This document shows positions 8,907 to 26,996 of a DNA stretch of 64,000 nucleotides, in pieces. The first letter of the stretch is position 1. Each line of letters begins with the position of its first letter. Under the pieces are notes generated by a model. The model was given only the letters and a program-made list of their open reading frames with translations, did not search any database and was not told where the DNA came from. The position numbers and the translations under genes are program-made. Source of the DNA: Adineta vaga (lineage: Eukaryota; Animalia; Rotifera); contig CP075494.1 in assembly GCA_021613535.1 (NCBI GenBank), forward strand, positions 6,014,001-6,078,000, in the 5' to 3' direction.

Positions 8907-9973
8907 AGTTAACAATCTAAAACTTCACCGAGAGAATGTATGAAGAGTTCATCAATCAAAATCAAATCACAGATGGGATTTGAATAGAAAACTGTACGGA
9001 TTAAATATCTGACTTTTGAATCTTACTAATCGTTTTTGTAAGGACAGATACTTATTCTAAAATTGCGTTTTCCTACGATATGTGCAAGTAAATGAACTAA
9101 AATAAAGTGTTTTAAACACACCCACGAGCGTGTCAAACATCAATTTATATTGGTACGTTTGAACCTTTAATACTCGTGTAATCATATGAACAACTACTGT
9201 CTAACAGAAATAGAAGCTAGTTTTGCCACGAGAAAACATTAAGCCATGTCGTCTTATGTATACTATAAAGTTCGATTCTTATCTTTACGTCAGTAGTACT
9301 ACCTTTTCATCACATTCAGACGTTATTTAAATTTACTTTTGGAGAAAAAAATCGAGCAGGATATTGTCTATAACATTAAAATAAAAGCAGAGAAAAAACC
9401 TACTTATTATCAATTAGTACAGATATTAGTAAGAGGTCACACACTTTCAGATGAAATCTATGTATTAAGATCAAGAAAGAATTTTATCGTGGGAGTCTTA
9501 TGCGAACTTCCGACTTCACATGTTTGATACATGATGGTAGCAGTATGCTTTTCTGAATAAAACTAGAATTCTTATACTGAAAAGAGAATATCATAGATAT
9601 GTTTCACTATATTAAAAATAATTCTCGGAGACAGATAATTTCCTGTCTCATCCGTAAAAACTAATATCGAATCATGTAAATAAACTAACGTACCAATATG
9701 TTATTGATGTTTTTCTATTCGCAACGTAATTCAATTTGTTTTCAACTATTAATATAATTCTCTATTCGTTTTTGTAAATTATAGGTTGATTTAAATGACT
9801 ATTGTCATCATAATCATTCTTGACTTGTATCTAGGGGAATGATTGAGATATGTGGTTAAAGAGTAAAACTTGAATTTATTTGTACTTAATAAACACAAAG
9901 AAAATCACATCTAAACATCGCAATGTTCATTTATTTTAAAATATTTTATCGCATTTTGATATTTATTTACAAT

Positions 9974-13297: not shown

Positions 13298-15685
13298 TTA
13301 CTTTTTCAAGCTTGCTATGTCTCCTTCGCCTCTTTTCACATCTTTATGATCAGGTCCATAATTAGCTCGATAAATCGAGAGACTTTCGTTGAAATAACGC
13401 AGTGCTTCAGATGGATTATTTAGTTTTTCATAAAGTATGCCAACATTTCGCAAACTGTTGGCAATGTTAATATGATCAGAAGTGAAGGTTTGACGATTGA
13501 GTTCAAGCGCTCGATGTTGACATCGTAATGCATCTTCGAACATGTCATAGTTTTCATACAAACAAGCCATTGATGTGAGACAGTCTGAAGTGATCTGGTA
13601 GTCAAACGGTTTAAAATCTTCTAAAATTGAGAGAGCTTCTTCATAATATTGCAATGCTCCATTTGGATCATTGTTCTCGATCAGATCACTCATGATCATC
13701 AATGTTCGAGCAACACGAAGATGATTTTCACCCAATCTATCTTTTTGAACAATCAGCTTTTCTTGACAAAATTCTAATGCTTTATCGATCTCATTCATCT
13801 GTTTGTATGTATCAATGATCCAGTCAAGATGATCTGAAAGATCTGGATGATCAAAAGGTAGTCATTGTTCTTCCATATTTAGCTGTTGTTGATAATAATC
13901 GAGAGCAACATCTAAATCACCTTTCTTCTTATGAGCGTATCCAATCTGACCGAGACATGGTGCTATGTTACTATGTTGATCAGGAAGGACACGTTTATAC
14001 ATCTCAAGTGCACGAGAGAAATATGTAAGAGCAGTATCGAAATCTTCCTTATCACTGTATACTCTACCAATATTTTCAATTATCATTGCTTTTTTTAAAC
14101 GATCATTTGGATAGTTTATTTCAAAGATCTTCAAAGCCTTTTGATAATAGTCAAGTGCTTTGTCATAATCGCCCTTTGTTTTATGAATATTACCTATATT
14201 GTTGAGCGAACCAGCTATATGAGGATGATTTGGTGGCAATTGTTTTCGGCGCATCTCATAGGCTATTTCCAGGTTTTTCAGAGCCGAATTCAATTCATCT
14301 TTTTTTCCATGTACAAGTCCAATATTGTTATAAACAGATGCAATATCAGGATGATCAGACGGAAGTGATTGAAGCAACATCTTGAAATATTTCTCTGCTC
14401 GATCCACTTGACCTAAGTCATACAACAGAAGACGACCAAAATAGATGATCGGTGAATAATCCTCTAGTTGTTGTTTTGATAACACAAGATATTCTTGAAC
14501 TTTTTCTGCACCTTCATCTGTACTGTTCAATTGCACTTTCCACATCGGAAGTGTCGAATCAAAGTGAACAGAGTGAATTTTGAATAGAGAATTGAGACTA
14601 AACAACATTTCTTCTTCACCATCAATTCGACTCTTATCCTTCACATCAGCACAGATAATATTCTTCATTGATAGATCAGCTTTAGTCTCAAATAGAACAG
14701 ATCGAAAGTCATTTGATACAACGTTTCCATGAACAAAATTAAGTGATGCATTGATGTTTCTTGATGTGGATAGAAATCCATTTGTTGAAATGACTTTACC
14801 AACATTATCTTTGAGTTTATCGAGTTCTTCACTTGGAATTTGTGTTCCACGATACAATGTTAGAACTTCTTTATCTTTCAGTTGTTGACGTTCGTTTTCA
14901 ATGGCTGAACATAAGTCGATGATGAAGAATCGAAAGGTATAGAGTAATTCAATATCTTTTGTTCGTAATGCTTTGTTCAGTAGTTTATATAGAAAACATT
15001 CATCTGTATACCATTCGATCGCTTGTTCACGACAATAAGTTCGTTTGAATTGTTTAATTTTCTCTAATTCTCGTTTATTGTTTTTATAATAATCATGACA
15101 CATGTCAATCATTTGTTGTTTTGCTTGTTGATCTTGTGACATTTGTCTGAGAACAAACACTAACATTTGATGTAATAGAAATGATGCTGATTCTTTGGAG
15201 AGATCTTTGAGTGATTTTTGTTTTTGATCGAAGAGACTAAATGCTATTGTTTGTTTTTCGACGAGTTCCATTTTTTCTCGAATAGCTTCTAATAAAGTCT
15301 GTTAATCAGTGAAGATTCCAACGATTTTACTGTATTCTTGCATTAATGGTTGATGATATTGACTGTTAGAACAGAAAATAAAAACAGCGACGAGAACTCG
15401 TTGATGATGAGTTTGTTAAAGTACACGTCGTGCAAAGGCACCTGAAACAATGAGAAAGATTTGTTCATCTTTGATAGACTTGATCAAGTCAAGACATCGA
15501 TTAAAATTTGAATAGAACTGCACAGCTGGATTGAGTTCAATCAACATTGTTTGAGTAAGAAGACAATCTTGTGATTGCTCCATATTTGCATCGAGCCAGA
15601 TGAGTTGAATATTTTCTTTGTTGTCCGAAATTTCATTCGGTAGGAGATCTCGTCGTCTTGTGTTTAGTGGTTCATTAGTAGCCAT
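13298..15685 (-). pseudogene. Intronless receiver-like + arginine-type ADP-ribosyltransferase + TPR-repeat gene with 3 in-frame premature stops
   Basis: The ORFs 15416-15685, 13862-15271 and 13298-13798 share one frame, with stops TAA 15416-18, TAA 15302-04 and TGA 13862-64. ART R-S-E motifs are LYRG / FLSTS / GEEEMLF. TPRs are of the HPDIASVYNNIG type. Confidence 0.85.
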
Positions 15686-18581: not shown

Positions 18582-19864
18582 ATGTCTTCAAAAAAGAAAA
18601 TTGCGATTGTTGGTTCCGGTAATTGGGGAAGTGCGATGTAAGTGTTTTGTGATTTGATTTGATCGAGTCTTTTGTTTTTCTTCTTTAATAAAGTGCTGGT
18701 CACATTGGTGAAAAAATTCTTCAATTACAAGATGAGTATGATCAACAAATTCTCATGTGGTGTAAAGAAGAAATCTTAGATGATGGAAGTAAATTAACTG
18801 ATGTAATTAATACAAAACATGAAAATACAAAATATTTACCTGATAAAAGCATTCCGGATAATGTTGTTGCTGTAGCTGATCTTCGTGAAGCTGTGAAAGA
18901 TGCAGATATTCTTATATTTGTGATACCACATCAATTTGTGAAACAAACTTGTGAACAACTCAAAGATCAAGTCAAATCAACTGCCTTTGCTTTAACATTA
19001 ATTAAAGTAAATACAATTAAATCTCTTTTGAAATACATCCTTTTTATTCATATAGGGTTTTTATATTGATGAAAAAACCAATGAATTATTACTTGTATCA
19101 GAAATTATTAAAAATACATTGAATATTTCATGTTTAAGTATGATGGGAGGTATGATTGATTTTTCTTTTCTTTTAATCATAATGATGTTGAATTCTGTTA
19201 TTTATATAGCTAATATTGCTAAAGAAGTAGCTGATAAAGTTTTTTGTGAAGCTACTATCGGTTCTCGTCATGATGAACATAGTGAAACAGTTCGACAACT
19301 AATTGATCGACCTTATTTTCGTATACGATTCTATCCAGATGTTGAAATTATTGAAATACTTGGTGCTTTAAAAAATGTGATTGCAATGTGTGCTGGTTTT
19401 TCTGATGGATTAAAAGCTGGTTTCAATACTCGAGCAGCTGTATGTGATTCAATTTGATTTGTTTAGGTACATTCATCTTTGTCTTCTAGGTTCTTCGATT
19501 AGGTTTCCGTGAAATGATAAATTTTTGTCGATTACATTCGCAAGAATCATCATCAGATATTTATCTTGAATCATGTGGTATTGCTGATTTAATTGCATCA
19601 GCATTAGGTGGACGAAATTATAATGGAGCCAAGAAAATGGCAGAAACTAATAAATCGTTAGAAGATATTGAAAAAGAAGATCTAAATGGACAATCATTAC
19701 AAGGTCCAGGAACAGCCAAGGAAGTTTATACTTTTCTTGAAGGAAAGAATTTATTAGATCAATTTCCAATGTTTCGTGATGCTCATCTTATCTGTCAAAG
19801 AAAAGTTGAACCAAAACAATTATTAGAAAATCTAACGAATCATCCTGATTATAATCAAAAATAA
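18582..19864 (+). CDS. GPD1: Glycerol-3-phosphate dehydrogenase (NAD+), cytosolic
   Basis: IAIVGSGNWGSA, INTKHENTKYLP, ILIFVIPHQF, GALKNVIA, ESCGIADLI..LGGRN, LNGQSLQG; multi-exon. Confidence 0.95.
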
Positions 19865-20018
19865 TAAGAAATTTGAATTTGTTCTATAAATTTTGGTGGT
19901 GCTTTGAAAATTAATTGTCAATCTAATTTAGTTTATTGTTTTCAAGTATTCATGTTTTTATAATAGTTGATAAGTTCAATAAATAAAATAAAATAAAATA
20001 AACTCTTCGTTCAGTTTT

Positions 20019-23000
20019 TTAAGTTGTATTAATCACTGCAACCGGTAGTGTAGATACAACATTCGTTATTTGTTGACGTCGATATCGAATAATATGATAT
20101 CCAATTTGGATGATTAACGGAGTAATCAATTTCAATACGACTGATAATCCACCAAAGAGACCAATAATAATCGTTATCGTATATACTGGACTGATTGATC
20201 GAGAATAAGTATAGGTACACCAAAGTGGAGCACATGTCGAATAATAGTGTTCATAAACGACTTTAGTTGTCCAACTATCAACTAGAAGAGTATCGATTAA
20301 CGATTGAATAGTATCATTACGAGATGAAAGAGTATCATTCAAAGGACGAAATACTAAATTTGTTGGTCCATACATTGATTTTAATTGATCAATGCATGTT
20401 ATATTATAAAGACATTCAAGTGTTGACTGAAGAAGTGATTCAAGAGGATAACATCCAACATGTAAACCAGGAATGATTCGTCCAGCGAAGGATGCTGATG
20501 AAATACACATAGGACTTGTACCACAAGTACAATTCTCAGTCGCATATGACAATGGTAATGCCCATAAGGTAGCCCATTTTAAATTCGCATGTAATAGAAA
20601 GAAATGCCAGTTCGATAAAATAGAGGAAACAATCCCGTTACCTTGATTCATATATCGAATAAAATCAAGAGTTAAAACGAATGTTCGAGGAGTTGATATA
20701 AGGAATTGTTTGAGAATTGTGTTTGCTTCTTGTTCAATCGTTTCACGTGATTGAACTCTTTGAGTAGTAATTGTATTTCGAGAAAATCGAATGATCGCTT
20801 CTGTCACAGTATCATTTGCTAGTGTACAAAATGATGAAAGTAATCGAAAATGTGAAACAGCAAAGAGACGATAATCATCATATGAATATTCTAAACTTGC
20901 TGTCGAAGAATAAAGTAAAGAAGTCCATATAGAATTGAATCGAATAAAATCACTTGAACATAATTGATGATAATAAGGTTGAATTGACATAAATGATTGA
21001 TAAGTAACAATAATATTCTTACAGGGACAATCAAGTGTTGTTGAATATTGTGGATGTAAACGAAGTCGATCAAATTCATCTTGAGCTGGATCAAGAATTT
21101 TGACAATTTCAGTTTGTGTTTCAATAAATGTATATATAATCATAATACTAACAACAATTATTAGTAGTAAAAGATAAAGACGTGTAGTAATGATTTCTCG
21201 TCGTTGCCGTTGATTATCATTCCATGATAGTTCACTTTTGAGTAGATTAAAATTCAATATTTTACGTTTCACCGCGTGCGACATACGAATCATTCTATGA
21301 CTATTTGTTAAAGAATCTAACATGAATACAATTAAATGTACGGTTATAAAGAATCTAATAGTTTTTCATTTAATTTACCTGTTGTATTCAATTGTGTTCG
21401 ATTTTTACGTAGTCGATTTCGCAATGGACGAATGATCATTGAAACAATAATTCTTAATCCAATGGATAAACCACCAAATAAACCGACGAGTTTAGTAATT
21501 GTTTCAAGAGGATTATTTCGAGCTGTATATGAATAAATACATTCTGCTGGAGCACATCGATCATAATAATTCTCGTAACTAATATTTTCATTCCAACTTT
21601 CAATCATTAGATTATCCATTATTATTCCAACAAGACTATGAGATGAATATCGAGTTTGATTTGTATTAAGAATTGGAATATCAATTGATCGGTCAGATTT
21701 AATTTCCTCTTGAACTATATCCAAACATGTTTGATTAAAAAAACATGAAAGTGAAGATCGAAGAACACTTGATAGAACGACACAACTAATCAATATATCG
21801 GGTAAAGTGAAATTTAAATAATATGGTGTGGTTATATCAAGGCCAGTATAATAGAAAAAACTCATAACATCATCACACATATCATCAATTCCACATGAAC
21901 AGCCATTTGTTTCTACTGGTTTCCATTTGAAATCGATGGTTTTCTCAGTAGTAGACAATTCATCTGTATGAAGTAGGACACTTGAATAGCCTGTTGTATA
22001 CATCGTTTTTGTATGTAATTCAACAAGTGCTAGAATACGATGAAATTCACTGATTGTATTTTTTTGAAATTGTTCTATACTTGTCATGATTTGAGTCTGA
22101 AAATCGGATGTACTCACAGCTGAATCGGTAATAAATGATGATCGACTAAAACTATACCAGGAGTCCGTAGTAATTACTTTCGAAAGTGAACATAACGTAG
22201 TTAAACTATTGAAAAAAGTTGGACCAGCAACTCGAAAATCGATTTCATCATAATCTGAATCGACGATATTTAAACTCGAAATAGAAATAATCCATCCTTC
22301 GGATATATACAAACTCGAACATATGGGATGATAGATTGGCGAAAGTGAAATGAATAGTTCATATGCATTAGCAATACGAGTACATGGACATCGAAGCGTA
22401 CTGGGATATTTTTCATATAAAGTTTGAAATATTTCTCGTGGTGGATCTAATACAGTTACTGTATAGACGCGACTTGACAATAATAAGTAAATGATTATAA
22501 TGAGCAAAGATGATAACAAAGTAATTATATAGACGCGAGTTGTAATCTTCGCCGTTTGTAATTCATAAGGATCAATACGACTTTCCGCTGTTTTAAATAG
22601 ATTCAATTCAATAATTCGAACTTTTATTTTGTTATATATGCGTCGAATACGGAGCATTAAAGGAACTGAAAGTATACTATTCCTAACCTGTTTTCATACG
22701 AAAAGCATCTTACCGGTATTATCACTTTCATGTCGATTTCTCAAATTATGTACCATATGTGGTATGCACATACGAAGTGCCAGTGTAAGACCACCATAAA
22801 CACCTAATAAAGTTGTTAAGATTTGTAAAAAACTGTTTTGTTTTGTTAACTTATAAGTGCAAAGAATCGGTGCACATGTGGAATAATAAGCAGCAAATGA
22901 AGTTTTAGCAGACCAATATTCGAGAAATAGACTTTGGGCAAGTGTTTCAACATTTGTTTCTGGTGAAAATTTTGTTTGATTGGCTTTGAGAGTATCCAGA

Positions 23001-23995
23001 ATAGTAATATCGGTTGCTGGAAAAAATGTTAAAACAATGTTGAAACATGATGAATTAAAAAAACATGAAAGTGCTGATTTAAGTAATGATTCGAGAGCAT
23101 AACATCCAACGACAATACCAGTAACAGTTTCAATGAAATCATCTGGTACATACAAAGCTCCTTCAGTTTCTTCAGCATATACTTCAAGAAATCTTGATTG
23201 TGCATAACAATTTGAACTAATACCACAAAAACATTCTTCATTATTATCCCCGTCCCAAACAGTTTCAAGTGGAAATGCATCAAGTGAACCATTCGGATAA
23301 ATAGTTAATAAATGCATCTTTGATGTTTGCATTGCTGGTTGTAAACCATTCATTTGAGTTGTATCGCGAACTAGATTTAGAAGACGGCGAAATGTATAAA
23401 TTGTTGATGTTTTGACAAATTCACTGATGACTTCAGTTTGACTTGTAAGTGATGATATTGAAAGAACTTGTGGACTCAACAAAGCAGTAGAAAGAAAATC
23501 ATCGACTGCATCTTGAAGTATACGATTAGCAAATAAACAAAGTGAAGCAAGAAGTTGAAATTGATTAGTTCCTGTTGAACGAAAATCGAATGGATGGTAA
23601 TAGGTCATATCTGGACTAAATAGAAGATTGATCCAACGTTCAGAAACAAATATACTTGAGCATACAGGATGAAATTTGTATGATATATTTATGAAGGTTT
23701 CATATGGTACTTCTACGTGACTACATGGACAATGGAGTGTGCTCGAATATGCTGAGTAAAGATTTTGGAAAACATCTTGTGAGGGATTTCGTACAGTAAT
23801 ATTTTCAACATATTGACCGAGAGCAGTAAAAGCACTGAGAATGAATACAGCACTTGTCAGAAGAAGGATATATATTCGAGTTGAAATAATAGCTGTACGC
23901 AATCGATTTGGGTCAGTTACAGTATCGATAGTTTCAAACAGATTCAAATTAACGATATGTATTTTAATATAACGAAGAATAGCTAGAAAATGCAT
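20019..23995 (-). CDS. Single 3-exon gene (~1288 aa) of three tandem TM1 / Cys-rich ectodomain / TM2 units; putative concatenated trimeric-channel-like protein
   Basis: Phase-1 introns 22713-22666 (48 nt, GTAAG...TTTCAG) and 21378-21317 (62 nt, GTAAAT...GTTAG) fuse the three ORFs in frame. Each unit has TRxYxxxL TM1, CPC, HxxCSS, D(F/Y)R, CxCG, YYxxCAPxxCxY and GxxGGL TM2. Confidence 0.8.
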
Positions 23996-24892
23996 TATGA
24001 TCCAATCAAAAATACCGATCAAACACCTCTTTTCTTCTACTGATGTAGAATACGAAATAAAGACAATGAGAAATTCGTCTCTCTTGTATCTGACGAATTC
24101 CTGCTTGATTTTATAAATGTAAAATAACCATATGACAAACTCTTTCTTTTATGTTGCATTTTTCATGCTAATTTTAATAAGTGTTCTTTTTCTGTATCTC
24201 ATCAGTTGATGAAGAAAATCGTTCAGTGCTTATAAATATTTAAACAAGAAAAATAGAAGAAAAACGTAACTAACATTTGAAAGTCATACGAAGAATTGCT
24301 ACTATGTCAACCGATAATCGTCGATGAGCATTGTTTACTACGTAGAGAAAGATTTGTCATTAGAAAGCTGTTACATGAACGACTTTTCATTCACTTAAAT
24401 GATCTTACTCTGAAAAATTCCAGGCAAATATCAAGAGAAAACTAATCAATATGAAATATATACAAGAAAAAATTTAAGAACAGTTTTTAAATAACTTTTT
24501 TTGTCCTAATTTTTACCCTGTCTTCCAAACATTCACTCTTCTCTATTAGAAGGAAAAAAGTACAACTATAAACGGAACGACATCGATGTGGAATTTGAAG
24601 AAACACTTAAACAATGCAATTTCTATAATACTTTATTAAATTGTATATGCACATCTGAGAATCGACAGTGAAAAATGAAATATTTTCATGTCTATTTCTT
24701 AACCAAATGAATGAATGATAGAGCAAATTCACAGAGGCATCTACGACGTGTATACACTTCTTCTTATTTATGTTTGGATATATTTATGAAAAAATAGATT
24801 ATCTGATTTAAAAACAAATATATATTATAATAAAAGTAAAAATAAGTTCATTGATTAGCTGTATAATAAGAAAATCATTTAGCACTTGAATA

Positions 24893-26996
24893 TCACTGTT
24901 CATAAGGTCGATAATTGAAATTATTGGTTGACATTGTCCATTCATGATTGAATTCACTCTCTAGTCTATCAACGCCTTCTCTCATCAAACATGACGATGA
25001 TAGTAATGATCGATTTCGTAATGATGATCGTTCAAGATTACTTGACATAGGTCTTATTGATGAGCGATTTCGTACAGTTCGAGTAATCATTTGAGTAGGT
25101 GAGTGCAAATTGGATGGCGTAGGTGTTAGCAATGAACGAAGGGGTGCACGCATATGAAGACGTCGAAAACGTTCATTAAGATCTGTATTCGCTCTTGATC
25201 GCATCTGATAAGGAACTATTGTCAATCCCATATTAGTAGAAATGGATGTATTTTTGCTTCTGGTTCGACTAATACTTGTCGAAGGACTGAAATAAATAAC
25301 AAAAACGTGATAGTTGTGATTGAATCAAGACATTCTTACCGTTTAATTTCTCTTCGTTCATTCTTAGCGTCTGCATTCCAGATAACTTGACCATCAATAG
25401 GACATGTTGGATGACTATGTAGAAGCCAACCATCTAGACAATGAGAAAAACAACGTCTTTTTTTCGATAGAAACAGATTTTTTTCCTTGCCTATACAATC
25501 AATATGGAATTTATGTGAACATGGTAATCGTCGAATTCGTTCACCTATTTGATAAGCTCTCAAACATAAACAACATTGTTCATTATGATCTAATAAACGA
25601 CTTTGTTCATGTACACGTTCCGTTGGTATTGATCTCACAATATTTTCTGGAATACTTTGAATAGTTGTATTTTGTGCACTGAATAAAATATGAATTGAAA
25701 GAAGAAAACTCATCTTTTTCGTATTACTTTTCTAATTGTAAAAAAACTTCATAGTTATTTTCATTGATATCTCGATTTACTAACATTTGATGAAGTGCAT
25801 TTGGTAAGGCCATTAAATGTTCACGTATTGCTATTCTCCAACGTTGAAAAGATTTCTAAATACAAGAGAATCAATTGATTGAATTCTACAAGTTAATATT
25901 ACTTCTCGATAATCAAAACTATGTTCATTGTGAATATTTAAATTAAAACACGTTTGACAAAGAAAATAATCTTCACATGTTGTACATTTATAACAATTGC
26001 CCGATATTGGACATGTACGGCAACGATGACATGAATAACCTAAATGGATTGACGATGTTTCTATTTGTTGTTCTTCAATTGTTCTAAATTGAATGAAATT
26101 AAAAACTTTAATCATTTCAGAGAAATCGTCTGCTAACCGAAATTCTAGTTTCAAATGTTCGGATGTACCAAATATTTCACGGCATAAAGGACATTTGATT
26201 GTTTTTTCACCGGTAGATACTTGATGATCGACCCAAACCTTCATACATTTTACATGTACATTATTTCCGCATCCACGTCTCGAATATCAAATCAAATGAT
26301 AAGCTAATTTATCAATTAAAACAAAACTGTTAACTAACCGACAATAAGTAAGAGGCATTTTCTTTGCTAGAAATTCTTCTTGACAGATAGGACAAACATC
26401 GTTTTCACCAATTGGCCGTTGATCGACTTCACTATTCACATCAATTCCATTGCCATTCTTTAAGACACAAAAAAAGCAATGTTCATTTAATCACAAATTT
26501 TCTTTCTGTCCCTTAACCTTTGCTCTATGATTACGATAGAATTTCTTTCTTTCGTCTTCATCCAAAGATAATCCACGTAGTAGTTCACTAATTTCTCGTG
26601 CGACAAGACCTCGCTGCCATACGACTAATATATAAATACAATATTTAAATATCTATATTTCACGAAAAGAACTATCTTACTTGGATTCGTTCTTGGTATA
26701 CGAAATCGTTTTAGAAGAAGCCAACATATGTGTTTACAAAGATCTTGATTACGTTGAAATGTCGAACATGTACATTGATGTGGATCACCGAGAAAGATCT
26801 ACTGAACAATAATATTTGATCATAATGTAGATTTTTACACAATTACTTTAAATGTTCGTTCATCATTTTCATCTCTAATAATGAACGCTGCTGGTCCTGT
26901 TTGTCTTAGAATAAAAAAAGTTGAATTCAGTGCATTATTTTGAGCTTGAAGGCATTTTTGTGAACATTCAACACGATAAGGCACACTACGAGCCAT
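24893..26996 (-). CDS. ZSWIM2: E3 ubiquitin ligase ZSWIM2/MEX (SWIM-RING-ZZ-RING)
   Basis: MARSVPYR...FKVFLGDPHQCTC...LCKHICWLLLK (SWIM); CPICQEEF...CRGCGNNVHVKCMKVW...CPLCR (RING); HLGYSCHRC...CYKCTTCEDYFLCQTCF (ZZ); CCLCL...LPCSHKFHIDC...CPID (RING). Confidence 0.92.

What the first reader, a model, noticed from the sequence alone, without database searches (positions are those of the whole stretch)
20019..24041. Three 'paralogous ORFs' splice into one chain: candidate single-polypeptide pseudo-trimeric ion channel
Seen: the ORF track shows three ~435-aa paralogs, but each of the first two ends just after a GT donor. The junctions are ...NT G|GTAAG (22713) to TTTCAG|TT CCT TTA ATG (22666), and ...TT G|GTAAAT (21378) to GTTAG|AT TCT TTA (21317). 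Both introns are phase 1, of normal size (48 and 62 nt), and restore the frame, giving ~1288 aa with 6 TMs. Each exon is one unit: a short cytoplasmic N-segment, TM1 (TRIYILLL / TRVYIITL / TRLYLLLL), a ~340-aa ectodomain with 12 aligned Cys (CPC, HxxCSS, (L/F)C, CxCG..C, (G/S)C, C..N..C, CAPxxC), and TM2 with a Gly motif (LLGVYGGL / LVGLFGGL / IIGLFGGL). There is no signal peptide. Established: 2 TMs, a large disulfide-rich ectodomain, intracellular termini and a Gly-rich TM2 describe DEG/ENaC/ASIC, P2X and PAC/TMEM206 channels, which are trimers of separate subunits. Inference: exactly three diverged units in tandem would build a complete fixed-order heterotrimeric pore from one gene. This parallels the 4-domain Nav/Cav channels, and I know of no natural example in trimeric channels.
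Basis: partly seen in the sequence, partly recalled or inferred. Interest (0 to 1): 0.92.

Follow-up and report, generated by a model that had tools for sequence, protein, structure and literature searches.

The report
Three-in-one rotifer membrane protein gene
The three neighbouring "paralogous ORFs" are three exons of one bdelloid-rotifer gene. Its 1288-residue product carries three diverged two-helix membrane units that are predicted to pack into a built-in trimer; the family has hundreds of genes, no known relatives, no known fold and no known function.

Summary
Three ORFs on the minus strand, 31-33% identical, are joined by two short phase-1 GT-AG introns (48 and 62 nt). The result is a 1288-aa chain identical to the public model UJR20676.1, "hypothetical protein" of Adineta vaga. 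There is no RNA evidence, but the comparative evidence is strong:
- All 22 internal unit junctions examined have a strong phase-1 donor at the same place. None of 12 terminal units does.
- Eight downstream units have no in-frame ATG.
- Some paralogues carry all three units in one intronless ORF.

The unit number is capped at three. Of the 150 best database proteins, 122 have three units, 28 have two and none has four or more. No genomic cluster in this genome exceeds three.

Two predictors support packing of the three units. AlphaFold2 on a full-length paralogue gave pTM 0.76. The complex test on the window's three ectodomains scored 0.69 against a best control of 0.07.

Kinship with DEG/ENaC/ASIC, P2X or PAC is not supported. 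There is no Pfam hit, no PDB sequence hit and no fold match beyond the transmembrane hairpin. Channel function remains an inference, at about 0.3. Named members of the family come from bdelloid rotifers only.

The parts
22714..23995 (-). Exon 1 = unit 1. It runs from the ATG at 23995 (MHFLAIL...) to the last exon base, G22714. It holds the N-helix with the LNLF motif, TM1 (about 23890-23819), the Cys-rich ectodomain and TM2 (about 22831-22754).
   Evidence: the first 427 residues of P0001 match exactly; unit HMM score 442 bits.
22666..22713 (-). Intron 1: 48 nt, phase 1, GTAAGA...TTTCAG. It contains the stop codon that ends ORF 1.
   Evidence: Genomic DNA contigs run through it. No RNA evidence.
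21379..22665 (-). Exon 2 = unit 2. TM1 is at about 22546-22478 and TM2 at about 21511-21434.
   Evidence: The AlphaFold2 model of this unit has pLDDT 90.2.
21317..21378 (-). Intron 2: 62 nt, phase 1, GTAAAT...TGTTAG. It contains the stop codon that ends ORF 2.
   Evidence: One 151-nt record of run X1 ('RNA?' is only a guess) runs through it unspliced.
20019..21316 (-). Exon 3 = unit 3, including the TAA stop at 20021-20019. TM1 is at about 21191-21123 and TM2 at about 20189-20109. The tail is typical of third units (RYRRQQI...) and has no donor site.
19932..19937 (-). AATAAA polyadenylation-signal consensus, 84 nt after the first base of the stop codon.
   Evidence: This is a sequence match only.

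Best explanation
Window 23995-20019 (minus strand) is one three-exon gene of Adineta vaga. Each exon encodes one complete unit:
- a cytoplasmic amphipathic helix with the LNLF motif;
- TM1;
- a disulfide-rich ectodomain of about 320 aa, made of beta sheets plus a long helical hairpin;
- a strongly conserved Gly-rich TM2.

Two phase-1 introns, at a position conserved throughout the family, join the units into one 1288-aa polypeptide with six TM helices and both ends in the cytoplasm.

The three diverged units most likely fold against each other. The helical hairpins pack head to tail around a pseudo-threefold axis, giving a built-in hetero-trimer with a six-helix membrane bundle.

The cytoplasmic parts are tiny and carry no recognised signalling domain, and TM2 is the most conserved segment. 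So the likeliest way of working is that an extracellular stimulus sensed by the fast-diverging ectodomains is passed to the membrane bundle, most likely as ion flow. That would make it an ionotropic receptor of a new family, expanded to hundreds of genes in bdelloids for sensing the environment or pathogens.

Confidence by step:
- Gene structure and single chain: shown, about 0.95.
- Restriction to three units: shown.
- Pseudo-trimeric packing: predicted, about 0.7.
- Ion conduction: inferred, about 0.3.
For: **Gene structure**
- The exons plus junction codons reproduce public protein UJR20676.1 exactly.
- All 22 inter-unit junctions in paralogues, in a metagenomic orthologue (L031) and in Rotaria (L032) have a strong donor in phase 1 a few residues after the TM2 tail, and an in-frame pyrimidine-rich AG before the N-helix. 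None of 12 terminal units has such a donor.
- Eight downstream units have no in-frame ATG.
- Intronless paralogues carry three units in one ORF: C2:1012970-1016686 is one 1260-aa frame, and C6:866234-870067 is one stop-free match over all three units.
- The spacers between the ORFs, 36 and 20 nt, are too short for separate promoters and poly(A) sites.

**Exactly three units**
- The 150 best representatives split 122 / 28 / 0 for three, two and four or more units. The list is ranked by summed score, which would favour proteins with more units.
- The 126 scored places in the own genome form 22 triplets, 12 doublets and 36 singles. No cluster is larger, even with a 10-kb joining distance.
- Seven triplets have unit-free flanks of at least 1.4 kb.
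- One Rotaria 'two-unit' model is a three-unit locus that was split at a GC-AG intron.

**Packing**
- The AlphaFold2 model of a full three-unit paralogue has pLDDT 83.1 and pTM 0.76 over 1200 residues.
- The complex test of the window's three ectodomains scored 0.69 against a best control of 0.07. That mark was reached by 51 of 78 solved complexes and 2 of 108 mismatched pairs; the runs agree in at least 86% of contacts, and the partner's pLDDT is at least 84.
- Unit 3 touches both other units. Unit 1 uses mainly its helix-A face and unit 2 its helix-B face, which is a head-to-tail pattern.

**Positional identity**
- For 92 of 111 units, the nearest unit in another protein sits at the same position.
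- Third units share their own tail motif.

**Function hints**
- TM2 is the best-conserved segment: G396 in 107 of 111 units, G395 in 94, L397 in 95, L401 in 95. It is conserved on all helical faces, as expected for a buried helix.
- No cytoplasmic domain was found.
- The first look at the own genome gave about 1160-1300 unit candidates.
- One subfamily adds a seventh TM and an FG-GAP propeller, which puts that propeller on the same side as the Cys-rich domains.
Against: - No transcript evidence. No RNA run holds the locus. The only possibly-RNA record, X1 (151 nt, depth 3), crosses intron 2 unspliced.
- I could not inspect coordinates. The unit 1-unit 2 interface, and therefore closure of the ring, a central pore and threefold symmetry, were not seen directly.
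- pTM and ipSAE are the predictors' own confidence. The complex test was calibrated on pairs of single chains, not on domains of one chain.
- Nothing ties the family to any channel: no sequence or fold match.
- TM2 shows no single conserved polar face.
- On the unit tree the three positions are not three clean clades: 25 label changes against a minimum of 2. Positional identity is therefore strong only within subfamilies.
- 28 of the 150 representatives have two units. Only one of these was checked.
Confidence: 0.6

Rival explanations
1. Same single-chain pseudo-trimer, but not a channel. It would be a surface recognition, adhesion or immune-type receptor (or a structural glycoprotein). The variable ectodomains would bind ligands, and the output would go through partner proteins or clustering. 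The conserved TM2 would serve only to pack the bundle.
For: - A huge lineage-specific expansion with units only about 28% identical, which is typical of recognition repertoires.
- Fusion of a subfamily to FG-GAP and NHL propellers, which are ligand-binding or adhesion modules.
- No similarity to any channel.
- TM2 has no conserved polar face.
Against: - The cytoplasmic parts are very short and carry no known signalling domain.
- TM2 and the pre-TM1 helix are the most conserved parts of proteins that otherwise diverge fast. That is unexpected for a mere anchor.
Confidence: 0.35
2. The chain is real, but the three units do not close on each other. They would be beads on a string, or each unit would oligomerise with units of other chains to form larger or mixed assemblies.
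For: - The unit 1-unit 2 interface was not reported, because only the partner chain is scored.
- Predictors tend to pack homologous domains together.
- Two-unit gene models exist.
Against: - pTM 0.76 for a 1200-residue chain.
- Score 0.69 against 0.07 when a unit is swapped for an unrelated protein.
- Head-to-tail use of two different faces.
- The strict cap at three units is hard to explain without a closed three-part assembly.
Confidence: 0.2
3. Three separate genes: tandem paralogues transcribed independently, or as an operon resolved by spliced-leader trans-splicing. From my own knowledge, bdelloids have spliced-leader trans-splicing.
For: - In this window each of ORFs 2 and 3 happens to begin with an ATG near the acceptor.
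- One possibly-RNA read crosses intron 2 unspliced.
Against: - The spacers are 36 and 20 nt.
- A phase-1 donor lies just before each stop in 22 of 22 junctions and in 0 of 12 terminal units.
- Eight downstream units lack any ATG.
- Intronless paralogues are single ORFs of 1260-1400 aa.
- The public annotation joins the three ORFs.
Confidence: 0.03
4. A very diverged member of a known trimeric 2-TM channel superfamily (DEG/ENaC/ASIC, P2X or PAC/TMEM206) that has been concatenated.
For: - Same gross topology: two TM helices, a large Cys-rich ectodomain, intracellular ends and a Gly-rich TM2.
- PAC (7ji3) and FaNaC (8on7) appear in the VIA-align list.
Against: - No Pfam hit at E<=1.
- No PDB profile hit at E<=10.
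- Foldseek found nothing.
- Atlas neighbours above TM-score 0.5 are rotifer proteins only.
- The ectodomain contains a long helical hairpin.
Confidence: 0.05

Closest known systems
DEG/ENaC/ASIC, P2X and PAC (TMEM206) trimeric channels
   Same: Per unit: two TM helices, a large disulfide-rich extracellular domain, short intracellular ends, a conserved Gly-containing TM2 and three units per assembly.
   Different: - Those are trimers of separate subunits; here three units sit in one chain.
- No sequence or fold similarity was detected beyond the TM hairpin.
- The ectodomain here carries a long helical hairpin, and that hairpin forms the predicted inter-unit contacts.
Mitochondrial carrier family (SLC25, e.g. 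the ADP/ATP carrier)
   Same: From general knowledge: one polypeptide made of three homologous tandem repeats, each with two TM helices, forming a six-helix bundle with pseudo-threefold symmetry. This is the nearest natural precedent for a 3 x 2-TM protein in one chain.
   Different: - SLC25 repeats are about 100 aa and have no ectodomain.
- SLC25 proteins are alternating-access transporters of the inner mitochondrial membrane.
- There was no Pfam Mito_carr hit here.
- The units here are about 430 aa with glycosylation sites and 12 conserved Cys.
Four-domain Nav/Cav channels and two-pore channels
   Same: The same principle: subunits of an oligomeric membrane protein concatenated into one chain with fixed order and diverged positions.
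   Different: They have four (or two) six-TM domains of the voltage-gated fold. The Foldseek rows against Nav/Cav have TM-scores of 0.05-0.07 and are meaningless.
Uncharacterised bdelloid proteins (Adineta vaga UJR20676.1 and UJR38833.1; unnamed Rotaria and Adineta steineri/ricciae products)
   Same: True family members. UJR20676.1 is this gene's own product.
   Different: All are annotated only as hypothetical or unnamed proteins. There is no Pfam family, and I found no paper on them.

Membership tests
DEG/ENaC/ASIC (Pfam PF00858, ASC) | Sequence match to the ASC family profile | tested here: not met
   No Pfam family at E<=1 for any of the three units. A profile of 66 units found no PDB chain at E<=10.
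DEG/ENaC/ASIC (Pfam PF00858, ASC) | Ectodomain fold (palm, beta-ball, thumb, finger) shared with ASIC1 or FaNaC structures | tested here: not met
P2X receptors (Pfam PF00864) | Sequence match to the P2X profile, or fold match to P2X structures | tested here: not met
   no P2X chain among the matches.
PAC / TMEM206 (Pfam PF15122) | Sequence match, or a fold match that covers the beta-rich ectodomain | tested here: not met
Trimeric 2-TM channels in general (works-like test) | Three units arranged around a common axis | tested here: inconclusive
   pTM 0.76 for the three-unit chain. Complex score 0.69 against 0.07, with unit 3 touching both others through two different faces. The unit 1-unit 2 contact and the symmetry could not be inspected.
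Trimeric 2-TM channels in general (works-like test) | Ion conduction through a pore lined by TM2 | not testable with these tools
   Only indirect evidence: TM2 is the most conserved segment and is conserved on all faces.
Mitochondrial carrier family (Pfam PF00153) | Mito_carr repeat signature | tested here: not met
   No Pfam hit.
Bdelloid three-unit 2-TM family (unnamed, defined here) | Three tandem units, each matching the unit profile end to end, joined at the conserved phase-1 position | tested here: met
   Unit HMM scores are 442, 453 and 428 bits over profile positions 2-416. The junctions are shown.

The most novel reading that the evidence does not exclude
This is the founding, uncharacterised example of a new class of ionotropic receptor. 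It would be a natural single-chain pseudo-heterotrimer whose three 2-TM units, each with an ectodomain of a fold not seen in the PDB, form one pore. The class would have expanded to several hundred genes as the chemosensory or immune sensor repertoire of bdelloid rotifers.
Probability: 0.25. Interest if true: 0.88.

Novelty: new variant of a known kind. Interest (0 to 1): 0.66.

Why it matters
**If the pseudo-trimer reading holds.** This would be a natural experiment in turning a three-subunit membrane assembly into one polypeptide with fixed subunit order. That design is known for four-domain Nav/Cav channels and for the 3 x 2-TM mitochondrial carriers. I found no record of it for 2-TM proteins with large ectodomains.

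**Scale of the family.** The family is very large. The first look found about 1200 unit candidates in a 101-Mb haploid genome, and 3756 database clusters matched at E<=0.001. All named members are bdelloid. It has no Pfam entry and no match in the PDB.

**Relevance to bdelloid biology.** A large share of the bdelloid surface proteome is therefore of unknown function. Bdelloids are studied for desiccation tolerance, asexuality and pathogen escape, so a big sensor-like family specific to them is a plausible player.

**Practical points for annotation.**
- Gene finders split these genes. One Rotaria model is broken at a GC-AG intron.
- Prokaryote-style gene calling on metagenomes reports the units as separate proteins of about 430 aa.

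Tried and rejected
**RNA support**
- The look-up of sequencing runs found no run on record as RNA that holds the locus.
- Read laying showed only genomic contigs running through both introns, plus one ambiguous unspliced 151-nt record.

**Full census of the genome**
- The census therefore rests on 126 scored places out of about 1200-1300 candidates. Doublets and singles are lower bounds.

**Known folds and families**
- Pfam, PDB profile search and Foldseek PDB with the unit and with the three-unit model all gave nothing.
- VIA-align wide gave nothing beyond TM helix pairs.
- The ESM Atlas searches by structure and by features gave nothing beyond rotifer clusters.
- The Nav/Cav rows (TM-score 0.05-0.07) and the MakA, Wzz and ERGIC rows are noise.
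'No known fold' therefore holds only at the sensitivity of whole-unit searches.

**Positional clades**
- The unit tree does not resolve positions 1, 2 and 3 as three clades: 25 label changes against 52.9 when shuffled.
- I therefore do not claim a single ancient triplication with strict orthology of positions.

**Pore-lining face**
- The conservation moment of TM2 is nil, with 1994 of 2000 shuffles as high.
- I dropped the idea of a conserved polar stripe.

**Literature**
- Four searches found nothing on this family.
- The two bdelloid papers I opened (PMC3846280, PMC5408684) concern other genes.

**Earlier scan notes**
- None concerns this family.

**Joined model**
- The public protein P0001, which a search returned, served for comparison. 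Only single-exon parts of it were folded in the complex test.
- The full-chain fold used the natural paralogue P0068:1-1200, because every complete three-unit member in the set I checked is longer than the tool's 1200-residue limit.
Full report
**What is in the sequence.**
- The window is G000:C5:6014001-6078000 of a 100.8-Mb, six-contig, 30% GC genome. Its proteins are those of Adineta vaga.
- On the minus strand there are three ORFs of 442, 437 and 434 aa, at 24022-22694, 22657-21344 and 21323-20019.
- I read the junctions base by base:
  - ...ACC G|GTAAGA... (donor G at 22713) to ...TTTCAG|TT CCT (exon 2 from 22665);
  - ...ACA G|GTAAAT... (donor at 21378) to ...TGTTAG|AT TCT (exon 3 from 21316).
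- The introns are 48 and 62 nt. Both are phase 1 and both restore the frame.
The one refinement is that translation starts at the ATG at 23995.

**The spliced product is already a public gene model.** A profile of the three units, searched against 1.84 billion cluster representatives, returned P0001 as the top hit. It has 1288 aa and three matched stretches. P0001 is UJR20676.1, "hypothetical protein I4U23_023797 [Adineta vaga]". Without joining anything myself, I checked that the whole-codon translations of the three exons occur in P0001 at residues 1-427, 429-856 and 858-1288. The single residues between them are V and D, as the phase-1 junction codons predict.

**Is the splicing real?**
- RNA evidence could not be obtained.
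  - No RNA run holds the locus.
  - The runs that do hold it are genomic, with depth of about 100 and contigs continuous through both introns.
  - One 151-nt record of a run whose RNA label is only a guess crosses intron 2 unspliced. This is weak evidence against, and is equally explained by DNA or pre-mRNA.
- The comparative evidence is strong. I scanned 30 loci of paralogues from the same genome, a metagenomic orthologue contig (L031, units 55-59% identical to the window's unit 2) and a Rotaria socialis locus (L032) with a unit HMM.
  - All 22 distinct inter-unit junctions carry a GT[AG]A[GAC] donor in phase 1 a few codons after the basic TM2 tail. Each has a pyrimidine-rich AG that restores the frame about ten codons before the conserved LNLF helix. 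Intron lengths range from 47 to 1382 nt.
  - Eight of the downstream units have no in-frame ATG at all, so they cannot be independent ORFs.
  - None of 12 true terminal units has such a donor. The thirteenth unit examined (in L027) has one, and it appears to be the middle unit of its cluster.
  - Several paralogues have lost the introns. C2:1012970-1016686 is a single 1260-aa open frame holding three abutting units. C6:866234-870067 matches a three-unit protein end to end without a stop.
  - A GC-rich Logan contig (L034) also has unit 1 fused in frame to unit 2.
- The spacers between the window's ORFs are 36 and 20 nt. This rules out independent transcription units in practice.
- I put the single-chain reading at about 0.95.

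**Three, and not more.**
- I re-scanned the 150 best representatives with the unit HMM. 122 have three units, 28 have two, and none has four or more. The list is ranked by summed score, which would push longer arrays to the top.
- In the window's genome, two searches scored 126 places out of about 1160-1300 candidates. They fall into 22 triplets, 12 doublets and 36 singles. No cluster is larger, even when units up to 10 kb apart are joined. The second search completed several doublets into triplets.
- Seven triplets, the window's included, have at least 1.4 kb free of units on both sides.
- The Rotaria 'two-unit' representative P0015 is a three-unit locus. The annotation breaks at a CAG|GCAAGT donor (a GC-AG intron, phase 1) and restarts at an internal Met.

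**Structure.**
- *One unit.* The window's unit 2, folded with 66 aligned units, gives a confident AlphaFold2 model (pLDDT 90.2, pTM 0.77).
  - It has an N-terminal amphipathic helix and TM1 (30-60).
  - The ectodomain consists of beta sheets plus a long helical hairpin (141-172 and 183-223).
  - A long TM2 helix starts at residue 383.
- *The full chain.* A complete three-unit paralogue (P0068:1-1200, with 53 aligned three-unit proteins) gives pLDDT 83.1 and pTM 0.76. For a 1200-residue chain that value implies a defined arrangement of the three units.
- *The complex test.* The window's own three ectodomains (each within one exon) scored 0.69, with a best control of 0.07.
  - That mark was reached by 51 of 78 solved complexes and 2 of 108 mismatched pairs.
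  - The runs agree in at least 86% of contacts, and the partner's pLDDT is at least 84.
  - The tool notes that this job is unlike its calibration.
- *The interface.* Mapped to common numbering, unit 3 touches both other units.
  - Unit 1 contributes mainly helix A and neighbouring loops. Unit 2 contributes helix B and the strands after it. Unit 3 uses both faces.
  - Only 13 of unit 1's 51 interface residues have an equivalent in unit 2's interface.
  - This is the pattern of a head-to-tail ring, with the hairpin tips meeting near an axis.
- *What is missing.* The unit 1-unit 2 contact was not reported and I could not open the coordinates. Pseudo-threefold closure is therefore likely (about 0.7) but not shown.

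**Positions are not interchangeable.**
- For 92 of 111 units from 37 complete proteins, the most similar unit in another protein occupies the same position.
- Third units share a tail motif (RRxxRIxP-like) that the others lack.
- On a maximum-likelihood tree the position labels are clustered (25 changes against 52.9 when shuffled), but they do not form three clades.
- In 16 cases the nearest unit lies in the same protein, at up to 66% identity. Some intragenic conversion or re-duplication has therefore occurred.

**What it is not.**
- No Pfam family matches any unit at E<=1.
- A 66-unit profile finds no PDB chain at E<=10.
- Foldseek finds nothing below E=5 for the unit, or below E=0.3 for the three-unit model. 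The Nav/Cav rows there have TM-scores of 0.05-0.07.
- In the ESM Atlas only rotifer clusters exceed TM-score 0.5.
- Membership in DEG/ENaC/ASIC, P2X or PAC is therefore not supported. The resemblance is one of topology only.
- Caveat: the ectodomain was not folded and searched on its own.

**How it probably works.**
- *Shown.*
  - One chain with six TM helices and a topology with both ends inside.
  - This topology fits the N-glycosylation sequons and cysteines of the loops.
  - It also fits a subfamily that adds a seventh TM before an FG-GAP or NHL propeller.
- *Predicted.* The three ectodomains pack around a common axis.
- *Inferred.*
  - The cytoplasmic parts are about 35-60 residues long and have no recognisable domain.
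  - TM2 (TTLIGLYGGLxxxL[R/K]xxxP) and the pre-TM1 LNLF helix are the best-conserved segments in a family that is otherwise about 28% identical.
  - TM2 is conserved on all faces, like a buried helix.
  - The output of the protein therefore most likely goes through the membrane bundle itself.
- An ionotropic, stimulus-gated function is my preferred mechanism, at about 0.3. The main rival is a non-conducting recognition or adhesion receptor, at about 0.35 given the same architecture. The expansion to hundreds of fast-diverging genes fits a sensory or immune repertoire under either reading.

**Comparison and novelty.**
- The gene model is public, and the family is annotated only as hypothetical. 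I found no paper on it.
- The design principle, an oligomer concatenated into one chain, is known. From general knowledge, 3 x 2 TM helices with pseudo-threefold symmetry already exists in mitochondrial carriers.
- I therefore rate it as a new variant of a known kind of architecture, built from a family and an ectodomain fold that have no detectable relatives.
- If it proves to be a channel, it would be a new class.

I did not build or submit a joined spliced sequence. The searches used the exons by reference, or proteins that the searches returned.

Noticed in passing
P0014:1301-1781, P0022:1350-1824, P0010:1293-1718, P0096:1220-1964 (database proteins): About 18 of the 150 best family members carry an extra 430-510 residues after unit 3. 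The extension is a seventh TM helix (P0014 residues 1356-1374) followed by an FG-GAP beta-propeller; P0096 also has NHL repeats. The propeller would then lie on the same side as the Cys-rich domains. I did not check whether these are real fusions or merged gene models.
   Followed up: partly
L032:10942-11101 (Rotaria socialis CAJOBS010000686.1): The intron between units 2 and 3 has a GC-AG donor (CAG|GCAAGT) in phase 1. The public annotation splits the gene there into an 864-aa and a 415-aa protein. Other 'two-unit' family models may be artefacts of the same kind.
   Followed up: yes
L034:1095-3083 (Logan contig SRR10663368_217148): A family member lies on a contig of 54% GC, far from the roughly 30% GC of this window. 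Unit 1 runs straight into unit 2 with no intron. Its nearest named relative is from Rotaria sp. Silwood2, at 52% identity. The source organism is unknown.
   Followed up: partly
window 21243-21393: A 151-nt record of run X1 matches perfectly and crosses intron 2 unspliced, at depth 3. The run carries another organism label and its 'RNA?' type is only guessed. It could be DNA, pre-mRNA or intron retention.
   Followed up: no
L031 (ENA ERZ25067493, ctg160290_2x_c): This metagenomic contig carries the orthologous three-unit locus. The same NmrA-like genes appear at 97-1152 and 13800-14855, which looks like a doubled assembly of a shorter sequence. Its unit 1 is broken into two frames near 9061-9077.
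   Followed up: no
window 18755-19864 (+): Three successive plus-strand ORFs look like exons of a glycerol-3-phosphate dehydrogenase-like gene. The gene converges on the 3' end of the three-unit gene.
   Followed up: no
window 25336-25713 (-): An ORF with a RING-H2-like Cys/His pattern (CCLCL...CSHKFH..C) lies upstream of the three-unit gene. It is unrelated to the family.
   Followed up: no
G000:C6:13107503-13111386 (L026, L027): Two units are separated by a putative phase-1 intron of 1382 nt. The second unit again ends in a phase-1 GTAAGT donor, so a third unit probably lies beyond another long intron, outside the fetched DNA.
   Followed up: no
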